Shown piece after piece: positions 51,386 through 62,032 of a stretch of DNA of 64,000 nt. Below the pieces are notes generated by a model that searched no databases, was not told where the DNA came from, and saw nothing but the letters and a program-made list of their open reading frames with translations. Positions within the stretch are counted from its first letter, which is position 1, and each line of letters begins with the position of its first letter. The DNA is taken from contig OZ296648.1 of assembly GCA_965655095.1 (NCBI GenBank), positions 25,482,001 to 25,546,000 of the forward strand. The letters run 5' to 3'. The position numbers were made by a program, and so were the translations under genes. This DNA comes from Haplodiscus bocki (taxonomy: Eukaryota).

Positions 51386-52467
51386 GCGGACAGAGCTCCA
51401 ATTTCGATGCCATTGAGTTTTACAAAGTTCCATTCACTCAAGCCTTAGACTTGGTCCGCGGGAAACGAGCGTTTTTGCACGATGGATTCCTATTCGTTCC
51501 CCATACTGATATTTCATCGATCGTCGTCACACATTTCAGATCGCATCTCTCCTTAGAACTCGCTCGAACTTCCCAAAGATTGTCCCTTCTTGAAGACGAT
51601 AGAATCACACCTCGACTTGTAGCTCTGAGTAATCAGTACTTGGGCAAGAATTTCGGACAAGCAAGTGGTGCAGTTTCAGTTGATCAAATAGAACAATTAG
51701 CTGCGACATCGTTCCCTCTATGTATGACTAATGTTCACAACTTCTTGAAAGAAACAAAGCATGCAAAACATTGGGCACGTCTTCAGTATGGCCTGTTCCT
51801 GAAAGCTATTGGTCTGAACTCGGACGATGCTTTAGTATTCTGGAAAAAGTATTTGACCAAGAACTGTGGAGATGGTGACGCTTTTGATAAGAAGTATTCG
51901 TATCTCTTCCGACACATGTACGGAAAAGAAGGTAAAAAGACAAGTTACTCTGCCTACAGTTGTGTGAAGATTCAAAACTCAAATGCGCCCGGAACTGCTG
52001 ACGAGTTCCATGGATGTCCCTACAAACATAATCCAGTCAACATTCTGCAAGTCAAGTTAGACAAACTTGGGCTTCACAAGACAGAGATCAACGAAGTTTT
52101 GGATTTCGTATCTAGTAAAAACTATTGCATGGCGTGCACCAAGGAGTTTGAGTTTCGACATAAGGTCGCCGAAAATATGTTCACGTCTATTACTCACCCG
52201 AATCAATACTACGAGGAAAGCGTCCGCTTTTCTACCACTGGCAATGTTTCCAATAGAATGCGAGGTGTCCAAGCCAGCGAAGCAGTGCCGTTGGATTCTT
52301 TTGTTCAAGAACATGAAACGTTTGTGGCGTCTCAGAGAAACCTAAGTCAAGGTGGTGACATTAAAACAATATCTAATAGTGTGGCCGCAAAAAATCAAGA
52401 TGGAGTCAGTGATGAAGACATGCAGTTTTTGGACTTGAACGCTGCTGAGTTTGAAGATGATTTCTGA
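51386..52467 (+). CDS. PRIM2: DNA primase large subunit, exon 2 (4Fe-4S domain)
   Basis: TTCCAG acceptor, phase 1. FYKVPFTQALDLVRG, FPLCM, RLQYGLFLKAIGL, RHMYGKEG, YSCVKI, HGCPY, ACTKEF, HPNQYY; four Fe-S cysteines present. Total about 548 aa. Confidence 0.96.
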
Positions 52468-53295: not shown

Positions 53296-53665
53296 ATGAG
53301 TTTTGCAGTTTATGAAGATTTTGGCAAGTTTTTGACCCTCAAGAATCAACTTAGCCATTTAGAGAAAACAATTTTGAACAGATCAAGACAAAATGAAGAA
53401 ACATTGTTAGAAATGATTGAAGAGCTAGTGCTCGAGTTAACGCGTGCTATCGCTAGTGAACATCAAATGAAGTTTGAGTACCTGTCCACAGATACTTGGG
53501 ATAACTTCAACTTTGATCCAACCGTGGGTATCATACCCGTGGGGAATGATTGTGAGGACAGGCCAAGAGAGATCAAGACTGTTCAAGTCTCAAGTGCAAA
53601 TGAACCTTCGCTGCAAACTTTCGACTCTTTCTTGCACACTCTACTGTGCATTCATGAGCTTTTGG
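53296..53665 (+). CDS. SPO11: Meiotic recombination protein SPO11, exon 1
   Basis: LLEMIEELVLELTRAI...WDNFNFDPTVG resembles SPO11 IENIIQDII...WENIKFEDSVG; the phase-1 donor at 53666 joins HELL-A-SNNFATKR. Confidence 0.85.
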
Positions 53666-54374
53666 GTAGTCTTTTTGGGTTTTTTGTACATTTCCTCAGA
53701 GGCATTCCACTGCTTGTTTTCCTTACCCTGATCTAGGAATTTCTTGAATGTCTTTTTGCGATCTCGAAAAATTTTGGCAGGAAATCACAGAAATTCAAGA
53801 ATTTTGGCGAAAAAATCCATATCATATATCAAAAAATACTAGGATTAAATTCTTGTAAAAAATACTTTTTTGATCTGAAATTTGTACAAACCTGAAATTG
53901 AACAGGTGGATGAACGTTTATGTGAAATATTTTTTGAATAATGATTTAAGCTCAAGTTGGTGACGAATGGAATCTACACACTTAAAAAATCTCACTAGAG
54001 TGCTGCCACGTGCATTTTTGCTTTGAAATCTTAAATTTTTGGGTGGCCGTTTTCGTGTTTGTCTAGTTGTTCATCACCAATCATTACGATTTATCAAAAC
54101 AAGTATTGGAGCTCGATTAGGAACCAATTTCGATATTAGTTCGGTTAAGTTTTACTTGCGGGTGATTGTGGTATCGGACAAGGTTTTCTACACCATTTGA
54201 AAAGTAACTAGTGCTACGAGAGTTCGAGCGCTTGAAATGGCTGATTTCAATTTTAAATTACGTAAGCAATGCTCATTGCAAAAAAACCTTGGGCCTTAAT
54301 TCTTTTCATTTGCATAGCTGTTTTTCATACTAGTTCGCTTTACAAAAACGGTGATATGTTGATGTGTATTTTAG

Positions 54375-54527
54375 CGTCCAACAATTTTGCCACGAAGCGT
54401 GACTTGTTTTACCGCAACCCGTCGGTTTATGATGGCAAACAGAGGAACCTCGATCGTAATGTGGATATCATTTGTAGCATGTTCAAGGCCGACCGGTTGG
54501 ATTTCCATGTTATGTCTTCTGCCAAAG
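54375..54527 (+). CDS. SPO11: SPO11 exon 2 (winged helix, catalytic Tyr)
   Basis: ATKRDLFY catalytic motif...DFHVMSSAKG; TTTTAG acceptor, phase 1 at both ends. Confidence 0.93.
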
Positions 54528-55167: not shown

Positions 55168-55423
55168 GATTAATTTTCGGTGATCTGAAAATGAAGTTGA
55201 GTCAAGGCGCTGGTCACGTAGACTGCCTCGCCTGTCCACAATCAATTCCTTTGAAATTGGATGAAGTATGCGACGTTCATTCAACAGCTAAGTTCATTTT
55301 GGTCATTGAGAAAGATGCGACTTTCCAAAACTTTGTGCAAAATAATCTAATCAAGATGTTGCCTAATTTCATTATGTTTACTGCCAAAGGATACCCCGAT
55401 ATTGCTAGTAAAGCCTTTCTCAG
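55168..55423 (+). CDS. SPO11: SPO11 exon 3 (Toprim)
   Basis: GLIFGDL, FILVIEKDATFQ, TAKGYPD; phase 1 in, phase 2 out. Confidence 0.95.
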
Positions 55424-56080: not shown

Positions 56081-56309
56081 GTTCCTGGTGGTACTGCTCA
56101 AGATTCCAGTTTTTGTTTTGTGCGACGCAGACCCTCATGGGATAGACATTATGACGCAATACAAGTATGGATCTCGTAACTGTGCCGTGAATAATCAACA
56201 TCTCACTCTGCCATGCTTGTACTGGCTGGGAATTTGGCCTTCGGAAATGAAGAGCATGCATGTATCTCAGCAATGTCTGCTTCAACTCACTGATAACGAC
56301 TTGACCAAA
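56081..56309 (+). CDS. SPO11: SPO11 exon 4 (Toprim DxD)
   Basis: PVFVLCDADPHGIDIMTQYKYGS, WLGIWPSE, LTDNDLTK; phase 2 in, phase 0 out. Confidence 0.95.
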
Positions 56310-59300
56310 GTTAATAATTTTGATTGTCGTGGTCGGCCGCTCATTTTCATGTAATTTCAAGGTCTGATGAGTTGATGAAAAAGTTCGAGAAGCGTTGGTA
56401 AAATGATGCTTGAAAAAGTATAGAAAAGCCTCTGGAACTGTTTGTTACTTCAAAAGGTTTTCCTAATTGCGCTTCTGAAGGCCACAAAAGTATCGAATAG
56501 AACTCGCCATGGGAGTTGTTTTCAAATGTGATGATGGGTAGAATTGAAATTAATCACAAGAAGAACAAGAGGCGCAGCAGCACTGCGATATTTTCCGTCG
56601 GTGGTGGGTAAGAAAGGGCTCTAAAAATGAAATGGCTGAAGAACATGGGCACCTTAGGGAGCGAGGAGGCCCCCTCTTATTCTAGTAAGTACAATATTAG
56701 ACAAAAATTGGTATTGGCAAAACTCATTTCGAGTCCAGAGGAACATTTTCAGCCTTTTTTGAAACAAACTTTAGAATCTTATTCGGACTTTGAGCCAACA
56801 ATTTTCAGACTTTTGATAAAAAATGTTCGGCAGGGTTGTCAAAACCGCATTCTACGCGTACAAAAGAACATTTTGAAGAAAAGAGTTATTTGAAAAACAC
56901 TAAATTTTATAATTTTTTTCGGACTTAGAGCGAAAAAATTTCGGGCTTTTAGCGAAAAATGTTCGGCAGGGTTATCAAAACGTTTCTACATATCCAAAGG
57001 AACTTATTGGGATTTTTGAAAAACGTGAACATGTTCACTCCGAATTGGCAGATTCCTGAGAAAAAATTCAACCTATTGAGAGGAAGATTATCTTTTCGTG
57101 ATTTATATTATCATAACCACGGCTCAAAGTAAGAAAAAGTTAACATGCTTGTGGTGTTTCGCTGTATCAGAAACCTGGAGGCGTGTTGTGCATATACATG
57201 CAGTGAAGACTATCGTCTAGACTGATTAAAACAAAATGACCGCCTAGCACCGGAATATTTTTTGGGCAATTACAATTTTTGATCAACTTTTTTCAAAAAA
57301 TTAAAGCAAATATCAATTTCCACAAATATCACGCTCTCCACAAATATCAATTCCACCATTGATTTCTGCTATTCTTGGCATTATCGAATTATCAAGGCTC
57401 CGAAGCAAAGTACGAAGTCCGAGGTGTTTTTCTGAATCACCTGAAAATTTATAACTATCTTGCTAGATCTTGATAGGGAAAATCCAGCCAACAATTTTAT
57501 AGAAAACGAGTTTCACCATAGAAACAAGCCACTAAATCGCACCTTTGCCAATTTCAGCCCATGAGAGTTCGATTGCAAGGAAAATGTTTCGGAATATGTT
57601 TATCCAGTGGCCTTACACGCAGATGAAATTGTCCACTGAGACCTTGAACGGAATCCAGTCGGTAGTTTTGGAGACATGAGTTGAAATCTCAAGAAAAACC
57701 ACATCCATATACAAGTTTTAGAATTCTCTGCCAATGAGGTTTCCGCTGGAGCGACAAGACAATGTTCTTATTTGAAAACTGTTCAAACTAGTAAACTTGT
57801 CGATCGACGTCTTGATGAAGAAATGCAGCCGATAGCTTTGGAAAAAATTAGTTTTAATATATAGACTTATACATAAGTTTTGGCAATCCAAGCCTATCAA
57901 ATTTTAGAAGAAAAGAGAGCATATGGATACTAAATCATGCTGTAGAAAAAAATTGTTAACTGACGGAAGAAATCCTGGCAGTTGCTCTCGGGGAAACCGA
58001 CTTTGATTACCAAGTGGAGTCATACCATTATTAAGTTTTTGACTATTTTGGAAAGAGCCAAATGCATTTTTAATGAAACAATTAACTTTTCACGGGTAGA
58101 AATTTGTCGATTGATAGTTGGTGGATGAAATGGAGCCAGTAGTTTTGGAGAACAAAAGCTTTGATTCTGAGGAAATATCGGAAACTTTTGCACTTTCTGG
58201 CTTTTTAGGTCTCCAAACTTTTCGATGTCAGAAACGTTTCCCTAAAAGAATACTTTTGAATGATGCCCTATAATAGCAAAATTGTTGACGGAGACCTTGA
58301 TTTGAGAAACTCAGCCGGTTGTTTTGAAAAAAAATCGAGTTTGGTTATCAAGACAGATCATACGAATATGGAATTTTTTGGCAATTTGCGCCTATCAAGT
58401 TTGCGTTGTTAAGAACCAAACGCAACAACCTTCAAGAAAAATCAAACAACTTCCACTTTCTATCTGTCGGTCCATAAAGTTTGCGATTTAAGATTATTTA
58501 AGATATTTAAGGGAAAATATCCTTGAACAATGTTCTACGGATAAAAATTGTTGATTGAGACCATGATTGAAGAATTCGATGTTGTTGTCAAAGGAATCGA
58601 GTCTCTATCCAGACGATTCATACAAATATGCAAATGTTGAGTTTCCGCGTATCAACTTTTGTTCCCTAGGAACCAAACAAAGTTTTGACATTAGATTAGC
58701 TTATTCCAAGTAAAAAAATTTGGACTGAGACATTGATTGAAGAAGTGCAGCCGACAGTTCTGCTAAAATTTAGCTTTGAATTTCGAGAAAAGTCTTTATT
58801 GTATGCACTTTCCTGCTTAATCTATCCGCAAAGTTCTCGATGGAAGAACTGGCATCGCAGACATTGTTGTTGCAGGGCGTTTTGCAAGTAGGAAACTGTC
58901 GATTGAGACCCTGACAGAGGAGTTATAGCGGGTAGTTTTGAAGAAAAATTAGGATGGTTAATATACGTAGAAGGAGTTGTTGCTAATTTCGGTCAAAGGA
59001 GTATCTATTGGAACCGTCAAATCACAGAATATTTGCCGAATACCCTCTTATATGGTGACAGTATTCTAGTGGGATGTTGATAGATGATAACAAGGTAGTT
59101 TTGAACAAAATTTGGTTTGAGTTTTGTTTTATAAAATTACCTGTCTAATATTTTTTTAGCTGAATTCATCCTTGTTGCAGATTTCAGGTATTCAAATCGA
59201 AGTACTTCGATAAAAATGGACCTTCTACGAATTGAAAACTGATTTCTAGTCGTGATGGAAAAAGTACATTCGGTCGCTTTGTAGGGAAATGATTTAGACT

Positions 59301-59984: not shown

Positions 59985-60760
59985 AAAAATTGTCGGAAAC
60001 TTTTTGTCTCACAGTACCGAAAAGTTAGTAAGGGTGCCCTTTATTTTTTCTAAAAATATCCGCTGTTTCTGAAAGTTCCTGGCGCTGCCCATTTGTCGGG
60101 TGCGAAAATTGTGGTGAACCATAGAGAGGGTATTACAAAAAGATTGCAAAAACTTTTTATCCAAGAAAATTTTGATGAGGGGGTCGTTTGGTCTTCCTGA
60201 AAGTTTCTGGTATCGAAGATTTCTGCTTAAGATATCATAATTTTTCGTCAAAAATATACTGTCTCACAGTGCCGAAAATTTTCGTAGAAGGGAGCTTTTG
60301 GTGTTTGCAAGTACTTGCCTCTATTTTGCATAAACTGCACTTGCACGCTTCAAAATAATTTGCCGGGGAAAACAATTGGGAAAAATAGTGGAAAATTCTT
60401 GAAAATAATAAGAATAGAAGATAATAGAAAAAACAATCCTCGTTAATGTAAATCGTATTAATAAAGTAGGAAAATAAAGGTGAATGCTGGGAATCGAACC
60501 CGTACCTACCGCTTCAGAACCCTGTTGTTCTAACCACTATACTATTGTAAAAATTGGAGTTTATGATTTCACTGACATTTGTCAGAAAAATATCTGACAC
60601 GACAGAAATTCAAACCCGGACCTACTGCTTGAGAAATTTTTGTCCTCACTGCACTGCCGGGTCAATTTATTTAAAAATGAAAATAGTTGCCAAAAATACA
60701 CTGAGAAAAAATGACCCTACTAAATGAAAATTTTTTCTTACACATTTGAAAGTTTGTGGC
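59985..60760 (+). repeat. Tandem-array plus double pseudo-tRNA element in SPO11 intron 4
   Basis: TGTCTCACAGT(A/G)CCGAAAA units, followed by reverse complements of the 31578-31752 modules and the AAAAAATGACCCTACT tail also seen at 38975 and (inverted) 31520. Confidence 0.75.
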
Positions 60761-61122
60761 GAGAAATATTAACGAAGCCTTTTGTTCCAAGGTATTTTTT
60801 GTTAAACGTAGAAATCAGGGTATTTTACTATCCTCGTCGAAATTAAAGCATGTGCAAAAATTAAGGGCCAATAAGTATCCTTAATTTCGAACACGGAAGG
60901 GTATTTATATGAAAAAGAATTGAAACCCAGAATAGTGGCGGCCGTGTGTGCATCAGGTCAGTCTTCCCTTCTCCACAATTGCGCTCATCCAAGATTCGAC
61001 TTCATTGAACGTACTTGGATGGCAGTCTACCACGTAGCTGTGAAAGAATTTTTTGTTTTGGAGCTCTTTAAAAATCTGAGGTACCGGTCAAGCGTCTTTA
61101 TAATTTTTAAATTTGACTCTAG

Positions 61123-61605
61123 ATTGAAGAATTGAAAAGGAGACCCTATATGAGTCACCATCCAGAGTGGAAGAATGAACTGGAGGTACTAGTCTCGTCG
61201 GGCCAAAAAACTGAAATTCAGGCAATCGCAGCGTCGTCATCTGAAGGCGTGTTCATATTTGGTTATTTAATCACAAAGCTGAAAGCTCTTTCTCATGGAA
61301 CGGATCCTTACGTTCGACCTCAACTAGAATCCCCAACAAATTCTTCTTTGGATTCTTTGTGGTGTTCGTCTTCTGTAGACGAAGCGGAGGAACAAGATGA
61401 AAATATTTCAATAGAACAAGATTTTGAATTGCCCGAAGTTCGAGTTGATCATTCAGAATCGGATGTTGACTTTGGCCAGGAAGAAGAAAGTCAAGAAAGA
61501 GATAAGTCTTATTCAAGAGACTCTTTGGAATCACAAGAGAGTCAACTGTCGAACAATTGTTGCTCTCAGGACTCCTTGATGTCCCATAGTTCTTCTGAGT
61601 TGTAA
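61123..61605 (+). CDS. SPO11: SPO11 exon 5, with acidic Ser-rich C-terminal extension
   Basis: CTCTAG acceptor, phase 0. LKRRPYMSHHPEWKNELEVLVSSGQKTEIQAI...YLITKL matches SPO11 RRPY..QPFWRKEM...KAEIQAL...YLPNKL. Total CDS 1491 nt, 496 aa. Confidence 0.9.
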   Translation: MEELKRRPYMSHHPEWKNELEVLVSSGQKTEIQAIAASSSEGVFIFGYLITKLKALSHGTDPYVRPQLESPTNSSLDSLWCSSSVDEAEEQDENISIEQDFELPEVRVDHSESDVDFGQEEESQERDKSYSRDSLESQESQLSNNCCSQDSLMSHSSSEL

Positions 61606-61800
61606 TTTTGGAGCTTATAGTTTTGAAAAATGGAAATTTTGTGAATTTTGAAGAAAATGAAAAATTCAGGGGAAAGTTAAAATTCTGCTTTTCTCCCGAC
61701 GTTATCATTTTGCCGGCTTCTTGGAAGTTTTGAACACTGGATCTATGCAATGATTTGGTTCGCTTCCTCATGTGGAATATTGTAACCTTATGCATGAACA

Positions 61801-61806
61801 AATAAA
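61801..61806 (+). promoter_or_regulatory. Candidate polyadenylation signal (AATAAA) for SPO11
   Basis: Only canonical AATAAA seen between the SPO11 stop and PFDN6; followed by a T-rich tract. Confidence 0.5.
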
Positions 61807-61882
61807 ACTAAGGGTTTTGCCGTTAATATGTGCTTGCTTTTGTCAAAATTCCATTTTGTGGGTTTCTTTTCAGATATTGAGA

Positions 61883-62032
61883 ATGCAGGGCATCCAAGAG
61901 CGCATTCAGAAGGAGAGTGAGTTCTTTGCCAAGAACCAGAAGGAGATGCAGAAGTTGTTGGAAAACAGACAAAAGCTAGATGCGCAGATCAACGAAAACA
62001 AACTGGTGAAAGAAGTACTTGATGACTTGACT
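61883..62032 (+). CDS. PFDN6: Prefoldin subunit 6, first coding exon (rest not found in the window)
   Basis: MQGIQERIQKESEFFAKNQKEMQKLLENRQKLDAQINENKLVKEVLDDL matches PFDN6 RQKLEAQLTENNIVKEEL; GTAAGT donor at 62033. Confidence 0.9.

What the first reader, a model, noticed from the sequence alone, without database searches (positions are those of the whole stretch)
61290..61605. SPO11 has a ~100-aa acidic tail with a cluster of four SQ motifs
Seen: after the conserved end (YLITKL) the frame continues through an Asp/Glu/Ser-rich tail containing EESQE, LESQESQL and CSQD, four SQ sites within about 27 aa. Catalytic Tyr and Toprim residues are intact. Established: animal SPO11 normally ends a few residues after YLxxKL; SQ/TQ clusters are ATM/ATR substrates; ATM feedback on break formation is thought to act through accessory proteins such as REC114. 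Inference: the feedback phospho-switch, or a DNA-mimic autoinhibitory tail, may be built into SPO11 itself in this lineage.
Basis: partly seen in the sequence, partly recalled or inferred. Interest (0 to 1): 0.72.

Follow-up and report, generated by a model that had tools for sequence, protein, structure and literature searches.

The report
Acidic disordered tail on acoel SPO11
The meiotic DNA-breaking enzyme SPO11 of this acoel-type worm really carries a 107-residue acidic, serine-rich tail that is in the spliced mRNA and recurs in three related acoel genomes, but the cluster of four SQ sites is not conserved, so a built-in ATM switch is possible and unproven.

Summary
The last SPO11 exon (61123-61605, + strand) runs without a stop from YLITKL (61264-61281) into a 107-aa tail (61282-61602). 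The tail has 24 Ser, 27 Asp/Glu, net charge about -21, and SQ at 61489, 61531, 61540 and 61564, which is four sites in 27 aa.

A spliced transcript contig joins exon 4 to 61123 and crosses the whole tail to 61667 with no joint. The tail is single-copy and predicted disordered.

Three relatives have an acidic tail of 70-114 aa in the same place. One matches the RefSeq model of Convolutriloba macropyga SPO11-like. Synonymous sites are saturated and introns and UTRs no longer align.

Across these species the proximal K/R-A/T-L-S-x-G, the acidity and the Ser-richness are kept. The SQ sites are not:
- S/TQ counts are 4, 5, 0 and 2.
- Only one SQ position is shared with the nearest relative.
- SQ enrichment over composition here is marginal (P about 0.07-0.10).

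The closest precedent is the independent acidic C-terminal extension of C. elegans SPO-11, which binds REC114-family PH domains (2026 preprint). A polyanionic docking arm is my best reading. The ATM-switch and DNA-mimic readings remain untested rivals.

The parts
53296..53665 (+). SPO11 exon 1 (ATG at 53296; donor GTAGTC)
   Evidence: ORF list. The gene model is in frame and gives 496 aa. The 1008 nt of CDS before the last exon fit the 1179 nt of transcript contig that lie before 61123.
54375..54527 (+). SPO11 exon 2, with the catalytic Tyr motif TKRDLFY (Y136)
   Evidence: Pfam TP6A_N hit at window 54365-54511, 45 bits; model.
55168..55423 (+). SPO11 exon 3, start of Toprim (VIEKDATF, E222)
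   Evidence: Pfam TOP6A-Spo11_Toprim positions 1-45; model.
56081..56309 (+). SPO11 exon 4, Toprim DxD (CDADPHG); donor GTTAAT at 56310
   Evidence: Pfam hit of 70.5 bits. The exon end is fixed by the loose end of the transcript contig...GACTTGACCAAA, joined to 61123.
61123..61281 (+). Last exon, conserved part (IEELKRRPYM...KTEIQAI...GYLITKL): end of the Toprim domain
   Evidence: Pfam Toprim positions 122-169 of 170. The acceptor at 61123 comes from RNA contig record 26. 75% aa identity to relative 1.
61282..61314 (+). Proximal tail KALSHGTDPYV. It continues the last helix. It is identical in the nearest relative; the others read KALSRG and RTLSFG
   Evidence: Alignments; the AF2 helix runs through KALS.
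61315..61602 (+). Acidic, Ser-rich, predicted-disordered tail
   Evidence: Composition. It lies on the disordered side of the charge-hydropathy line. AF2 pLDDT is 42-55 with no secondary structure. It is single-copy in the genome and is covered by the spliced RNA contig without joints or indels.
61396..61440 (+). DENISIEQDFELPEV, an acidic-aromatic stretch. It is clearly homologous to EEVLIDQEFSPEV of relative 1; its likeness to the two more distant tails is not above composition
   Evidence: Pairwise alignments and shuffle tests.
61489..61569 (+). SQ cluster: S459Q (61489-61494), S473Q (61531-61536), S476Q (61540-61545), S484Q (61564-61569)
   Evidence: Only the last site is shared in position with relative 1.
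61603..61667 (+). Stop codon TAA (61603-61605) and at least 62 nt of 3' UTR
   Evidence: The transcript contig ends at 61667.

Best explanation
Shown:
- This is the translated 3' end of the only SPO11 gene detected in the genome. The closest named relative is an acoel flatworm-like animal of the family Convolutidae.
- The protein has 496 aa: a complete Spo11/Topo VI-A core (aa 1-389) and a 107-aa C-terminal tail.
- The tail is in the spliced mRNA and is predicted to be disordered.
- Four related genomes keep a tail at this place as an open, acidic, Ser-rich extension of 70-114 aa.
- The tail's sequence evolves fast. Apart from the first few residues, only length class and charge are kept.

Inferred:
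- The tail acts as a flexible polyanionic arm that binds a basic surface of a partner in the break-forming machinery.
- The model is the independently evolved acidic C-terminal extension of C. elegans SPO-11, which binds the PH domains of the REC114 homologues DSB-1 and DSB-2 and helps SPO-11 act.
- Phosphorylation would add negative charge and could tune this binding. Candidates are the SQ sites (ATM/ATR) in this species and its nearest relative, and CK2-type Ser-x-x-acid sites.
- Phosphorylation is not the conserved core of the device.
For: Gene and core:
- Pfam TP6A_N and Toprim hits occur at this locus only.
- The 5-exon model is in frame, and the catalytic residues are present.

Expression:
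- In run X5, a 1724-nt contig joins the end of exon 4 directly to 61123 and runs to 61667 with no joint, indel or mismatch. X5 has no depth over the intron next to the exon.

Conservation:
- Relative 1, two haplotypes: L006 and L009.
- Relative 2: L007. It matches the end of RefSeq XP_075239262.1, Convolutriloba macropyga SPO11-like, 459 aa.
- Relative 3: L011.
- Only the sense frame is open in all four species.

Constraint:
- dS is saturated, and introns and UTRs do not align.
- Distal tail versus relative 1: local alignment z = 7.7 over shuffles. Codon positions 1+2 are 59% identical against 38% for position 3, Fisher P = 0.003.

Disorder.

Precedent: PMC13618423.

Recurrence: Heterodera SPO11-like proteins also carry ~120-aa acidic tails.
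Against: - No partner was identified. Pfam REC114-like, Mei4 and DUF4554 (which I recall as the TOP6BL/C11orf80 family) gave no hit in the genome, but this exon-by-exon search is uninformative for such fast-evolving families.
- No motif is conserved beyond composition between this tail and the two more distant tails (z = 0.3 and -1.3). Specific docking is therefore unsupported, and only a bulk-charge mechanism fits.
- Homology with the Caenorhabditis extension was not tested and is unlikely.
- The transcript evidence is one assembled contig from a run whose library type is not on record.
- In relative 1 the tail is interrupted by about 425 nt with an in-frame stop, and the splicing that would join the two parts is unverified.
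Confidence: 0.42

Rival explanations
1. One reading: the SQ run is an S/T-Q cluster domain phosphorylated by ATM/ATR after breaks form. The negative feedback on break formation would then act on SPO11 itself.
For: - Four SQ in 27 aa meets the SCD definition of at least 3 in 50 aa.
- The flanks are acidic or hydrophobic (ESQE, ESQL, CSQD), which ATM-type kinases favour (my own knowledge).
- The nearest relative has 5 S/TQ among 6 Gln in its tail (shuffle P = 0.007), and CSQ[DN]SL is shared in position.
- ATM/ATR targets in this pathway are known for Rec114 and DSB-1 (PMC3694840; PMC13618423).
Against: - The Convolutriloba tail has no S/TQ. Relative 3 has 2, which is not enriched (P = 0.49).
- Three of the four sites here are not shared even with the nearest relative.
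- Enrichment over composition in this species is only P = 0.07-0.10.
- About a third of SCD calls in yeast are expected by chance.
- No paper in the held library reports phosphoregulation of SPO11 itself.
Confidence: 0.13
2. DNA-mimic autoinhibition: the polyanionic tail folds back on the basic DNA-binding groove of SPO11 or its B-like subunit and holds the enzyme off DNA until it is displaced.
For: - Net charge is about -21 over 107 disordered residues.
- Acidity and length class are what the four species keep, as expected for a bulk electrostatic role.
Against: - AF2 of the full Convolutriloba protein places the tail at pLDDT below 50-69 with no confident packing on the core. This is weak evidence, because disordered mimics rarely model well.
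- No experiment on any SPO11 shows such a mechanism in the papers searched.
Confidence: 0.15
3. A tolerated appendage with no specific role: a disordered extension that arose by loss of the ancestral stop and is kept only because losing it brings no gain.
For: - Sequence turnover is fast: dN 0.63 against 0.18 in the core versus relative 1.
- There is no similarity above composition to the two more distant tails.
- Tail length varies from 70 to 114 aa.
Against: - The frame has stayed open in four species although synonymous sites are saturated. The chance of 107 open codons is about 0.001-0.004 per species.
- There is a coding signature at codon positions (P = 0.003).
- Acidity and Ser-richness are maintained in every species.
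Confidence: 0.2
4. Not part of the protein: the tail is removed by splicing, or the real transcript ends before it.
For: - No run on record as RNA was found.
- Relative 1 has a stop and a ~425-nt spacer inside its tail.
Against: - The spliced contig of X5 crosses the whole tail and the stop without a joint.
- There is no stop in 107 codons.
- The RefSeq model of the Convolutriloba orthologue includes its tail.
Confidence: 0.03

Closest known systems
C-terminal extension of Caenorhabditis elegans SPO-11 (aa 371-425, acidic patch 405-425), bioRxiv 2026, PMC13618423
   Same: Both are lineage-specific extensions beyond the canonical SPO11 end, both are rich in acidic residues, and both sit on an otherwise complete catalytic core. 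In the worm the patch binds basic residues of the PH domains of the REC114 homologues DSB-1 and DSB-2, and it becomes essential when a second contact is mutated.
   Different: - The origin is independent (Acoela versus Nematoda).
- The tail here is about twice as long (107 against 55 aa) and very Ser-rich, with an SQ cluster.
- No partner has been identified and no binding shown.
- Sequence likeness to the worm extension was not tested.
C-terminal helix of mouse TOPOVIBL, which binds the REC114 PH domain (as cited in PMC13618423)
   Same: A short C-terminal element of the SPO11 complex tethers REC114. The proposed role of the tail is of the same kind.
   Different: That element sits on the B-like subunit, not on SPO11, and is a defined helix rather than a long polyanion. 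Whether this genome has TOPOVIBL or REC114 could not be settled.
S/T-Q cluster domains of ATM/ATR (Tel1/Mec1) substrates such as Rec114, Hop1 and DSB-1 (PMC3564818, PMC3694840)
   Same: There are at least 3 S/T-Q within 50 aa, in a disordered region of a meiotic break protein.
   Different: The cluster is on the catalytic subunit itself, it is not kept in two of three relatives, and no phosphorylation data exist.
Heterodera (cyst nematode) SPO11-like proteins with ~120-aa acidic tails of DFDSDQ repeats (KAL3118147.1, KAL3100399.1)
   Same: A long acidic extension follows the YLxxKL end.
   Different: Those tails are repeat-built and Asp/Gln-rich without S/TQ, in unrelated lineages. They are undescribed in the papers searched.

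Membership tests
SPO11 / topoisomerase VI subunit A | Winged-helix (TP6A_N) domain with the catalytic tyrosine | tested here: met
   PF04406 at 45 bits, above the cut-off; RDLFY with Y136.
SPO11 / topoisomerase VI subunit A | Toprim domain with the metal-binding Glu and DxD | tested here: met
   PF21180 in three exon pieces covering profile positions 1-169; E222 and D275/D277. The Convolutriloba orthologue aligns with Topo VI-A 2zbk_A at E = 4.5e-25.
S/T-Q cluster domain (SCD) | At least 3 S/T-Q within 50 residues | tested here: met
   Four SQ within 27 aa; definition from PMC3564818.
S/T-Q cluster domain (SCD) | Cluster kept in orthologues | tested here: not met
   S/TQ per tail are 4 here, 5 in relative 1, 0 in Convolutriloba and 2 in relative 3. 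Only one position is shared.
S/T-Q cluster domain (SCD) | Phosphorylated by ATM/ATR after DNA breaks | not testable with these tools
   This needs phosphoproteomics or a kinase assay.
Caenorhabditis-type acidic C-terminal extension of SPO-11 | Extension beyond the canonical end with a strongly acidic stretch | tested here: met
   107 aa with net charge about -21. The canonical end is 6 aa after YLxxKL.
Caenorhabditis-type acidic C-terminal extension of SPO-11 | Binds the PH domain of a REC114-family protein | not testable with these tools
   No REC114 orthologue could be found to pair with it. PF15165 gave no hit, which is uninformative.
Caenorhabditis-type acidic C-terminal extension of SPO-11 | Common descent with the nematode extension | not tested
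   No Caenorhabditis sequence was on hand. The preprint places the worm extension's origin inside the genus, so common descent is not expected.
DNA-mimic autoinhibitory acidic tail | Intramolecular contact with the DNA-binding surface | tested here: inconclusive
   AF2 gives the tail low confidence and no packing. This neither shows nor excludes a fuzzy contact.

The most novel reading that the evidence does not exclude
In this acoel and its nearest relative, the catalytic subunit SPO11 itself carries the ATM/ATR-responsive element. Break-induced phosphorylation of the SQ cluster in the acidic tail would switch SPO11 off in cis, or release it from its partner. This would be a feedback route not known in any organism.
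Probability: 0.12. Interest if true: 0.8.

Novelty: new variant of a known kind. Interest (0 to 1): 0.45.

Why it matters
SPO11 is among the most conserved meiotic proteins and almost always ends a few residues after its last helix. Long acidic tails now appear in at least three separate lineages: Caenorhabditis (published in 2026), Heterodera and convolutid acoels (both seen here). That points to a recurrent solution for tethering or restraining the break enzyme where its fast-evolving partners have been rewired. Acoels are an early-branching, little-studied bilaterian group. The tail gives a concrete handle (a bait for pull-downs, four SQ sites to mutate) for finding their otherwise undetectable REC114/TOPOVIBL-type partners, and for asking whether ATM feedback can act on SPO11 directly.

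Tried and rejected
- Searching for relatives with the last-exon ORF found only the window's own protein. The length window and word index hid the relatives. Searching with exon 4 found them.
- A PDB search with the last exon gave only a chance RNF213 match at E = 0.08.
- The bacterial promoter and terminator scan is irrelevant to this genome.
- No run on record as RNA was found in either search. X5 was recognised as RNA-derived only after laying its contigs.
- Pfam REC114-like, Mei4 and DUF4554 searches of the genome gave no hits, and the controls cannot ring, so these results are uninformative.
- The tail DNA and protein have no second copy in the genome, so it is not repeat- or transposon-derived.
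- The 176-aa antisense ORF at 61271-61801 is rejected. It is open in only two of four species, and the splice shows transcription of the + strand.
- A conserved acidic-aromatic motif across all four tails looked attractive but is not above composition for the distant pairs.
- The last exon of relative 3 was not within 10 kb of its exon 4. It was reached by walking along the contig.
- No tRNA gene lies in the tRNA-like piece of intron 4.
- Complex prediction was not used, because no partner sequence was available and I do not claim a specific binding pair.
- One search listed, among cluster members, human SPO11 entries. They were not fetched, aligned or used.
- No N stretches and no refusals were met. 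Read laying was given 1601 letters.

Full report
**What is there.**
The window (G000:C1:25482001-25546000, + strand) lies in a 1.5-Gb animal genome. Pfam models for the two Spo11/Topo VI-A domains hit one locus only. From the ORF list and the splice signals I built a five-exon model:
- exon 1: 53296-53665
- exon 2: 54375-54527
- exon 3: 55168-55423
- exon 4: 56081-56309
- exon 5: 61123-61605

The model is in frame and gives 496 aa. It has the catalytic Tyr motif RDLFY (Y136), the Toprim Glu (E222) and DADPHG. The gene upstream ends with a DNA primase large-subunit exon at 51451-52467.

**The observation.**
After YLITKL (61264-81) the frame stays open for 107 codons and stops at TAA 61603-05. 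The tail has 24 Ser, 27 Asp/Glu and 6 Lys/Arg, with net charge about -21 and pI 4.05.

Given the tail's own composition, four SQ is only mildly more than expected. Shuffles give a mean of 1.8, and P(>=4) is 0.07 for SQ and 0.10 for S/TQ. The tightness of the cluster has P = 0.004, but that test was chosen after the fact. An open run of this length is unlikely by chance, at 0.001-0.004.

Among 52 SPO11 homologues with a recognisable end, the median length after YLxxKL was 6 residues (typically xxGGWI). A solved archaeal Topo VI-A ends 7 residues after the same motif.

**Is it in the mRNA?**
No run on record as RNA exists for this organism. Run X5 is a small run (82 Mb of contigs) from a third sample, and it behaves as a transcriptome:
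- A 1724-nt contig lies on 61123-61667.
- Its upstream letters, ...CTCACTGATAACGACTTGACCAAA, are the end of exon 4. The 4.8-kb intron is absent, and X5 has no depth just upstream of 61123.
- There is no joint, indel or mismatch across the tail.
- The 1179 nt of contig before the junction fit 1008 nt of CDS plus a 5' UTR.

The DNA runs X1, X2 and X4 cover the stretch uniformly and show no variant in the tail. The caveat is that this is one assembled contig and not raw reads.

**Relatives.**
A whole-library HMMER search with exon 4 found two near relatives among genomic ORFs, and a word search found a third. Their contigs were fetched.
- **Relative 1** (77% identity in exon 4; two haplotypes, L006 and L009, 99.5% alike; PRIM2 upstream as here). 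Its last exon reads ...YLIKKLKALSHGTDPYVGLRSQSPTSSVCSTQGWSSS and then a stop. About 425 nt further on there is an open frame, SSDDETEDEEVLIDQEFSPEV...CSQNSLTSSSDDF, which is clearly homologous to the distal tail here. An intron inside the tail is the likely explanation but is unverified.
- **Relative 2** (59%; L007). It has a 70-aa tail, KALSRGFTDTV...ELELLERSV. This is identical to the end of RefSeq XP_075239262.1, 'meiotic recombination protein SPO11-like [Convolutriloba macropyga]', which sits in the same 90% cluster.
- **Relative 3** (56%; L008 and L011). It has an 85-aa tail, RTLSFGSLKCDSQ...CDEPKE.

**What is conserved.**
Between this species and relative 1, synonymous sites are saturated. 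Only the conserved part of the last exon plus KALSHGTDPYV aligns as DNA; introns and UTRs do not. Even so:
- The distal tails align in frame at 38% identity, with local score z = 7.7 over shuffles.
- Codon positions 1+2 are more alike than position 3 (88/148 against 28/74, P = 0.003).
- Only the sense frame is open in all four species.

The tail is therefore coding and under some constraint. Against the two more distant tails, similarity is not above composition (z = 0.3 and -1.3). What is kept across the clade is the first few residues, a length of 70-114 aa, strong acidity (20-27 Asp/Glu against 4-7 Lys/Arg) and Ser-richness.

S/TQ counts are 4, 5, 0 and 2. Only relative 1 is enriched (P = 0.007), and only CSQ[DN]SL is shared in position.

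**Structure.**
The tail lies on the disordered side of the charge-hydropathy line. AlphaFold2 on the last exon gives helices up to KALS, then no secondary structure at pLDDT 42-55. On the full Convolutriloba protein the core is confident (most blocks above 90). The tail is at pLDDT below 50 to 69, with two low-confidence helices and no confident packing.

**Mechanism.**
The nearest precedent is a 2026 preprint (PMC13618423):
- Caenorhabditis SPO-11 has a lineage-specific C-terminal extension.
- Its terminal acidic patch binds basic residues of the PH domains of DSB-1 and DSB-2 (REC114 homologues) in vitro, in a way likened to mouse TOPOVIBL-REC114.
- The patch becomes essential for break formation when a second contact is mutated.

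By analogy, and because charge rather than sequence is what acoels conserve, I take a polyanionic docking arm as the most likely role (inferred, about 0.4). The SQ sites may add ATM/ATR control in this sub-lineage (about 0.13). DNA mimicry (0.15) and a tolerated appendage (0.2) remain open.

REC114, MEI4 and TOP6BL could not be detected with Pfam models on the raw genome. That says nothing about their presence.

**Novelty.**
The held literature has nothing on acidic tails or phosphoregulation of SPO11 itself beyond the worm preprint. The Convolutriloba tail is present in a RefSeq model but, as far as these searches reach, undescribed. Heterodera SPO11-like proteins also have ~120-aa acidic tails. 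Acidic C-terminal extensions of SPO11 therefore look recurrent. I rate this a new variant of a known kind, of moderate interest.

Noticed in passing
window 61606-61883; loci L012-L014: The prefoldin-6 mRNA contig of X5 (depth 264) starts at the acceptor at 61872 with 20 non-genomic letters, TTGTGATAAACTTATTAAAT. These letters are absent from the window. They occur at 14 or more places on many chromosomes, one of them followed by GT. This fits a trans-spliced leader. The SPO11 transcript reaches at least 61667, so the gap between the two genes is at most about 205 nt, which is operon-like, as note s1-376623 proposed.
   Followed up: partly
window 51451-52467; L006 4384-4800; L009 2816-4145: The DNA primase large subunit (PRIM2) lies directly upstream of SPO11 on the same strand, both here and in relative 1. 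The PRIM2-SPO11 neighbourhood is therefore conserved.
   Followed up: partly
L006 10766-11190 and L009 (same place): In the nearest relative the SPO11 tail is split by an in-frame stop and about 425 nt in both haplotypes, followed by an open frame homologous to the distal tail. This is either an intron gained inside the tail or a truncation in progress. No RNA was available to decide.
   Followed up: partly
proteins P0115, P0157 (Heterodera trifolii, H. schachtii): Cyst-nematode SPO11-like paralogues carry ~120-aa tails built of DFDSDQ(Q)ND repeats after YLDNKL. This is a third lineage with an acidic SPO11 tail.
   Followed up: no
window 61271-61801, minus strand: A 176-aa antisense ORF overlaps the whole tail. 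It is open in only two of the four species, so it is most likely a by-product of the GAN/TCN-rich codons.
   Followed up: yes
window 60823-60985: X5 also has a low-depth 163-nt contig inside intron 4. It could be unspliced pre-mRNA or a transcribed repeat. The intron is full of short interspersed repeats, including a tRNA-like piece near 60480-60550 that ARAGORN does not call.
   Followed up: partly
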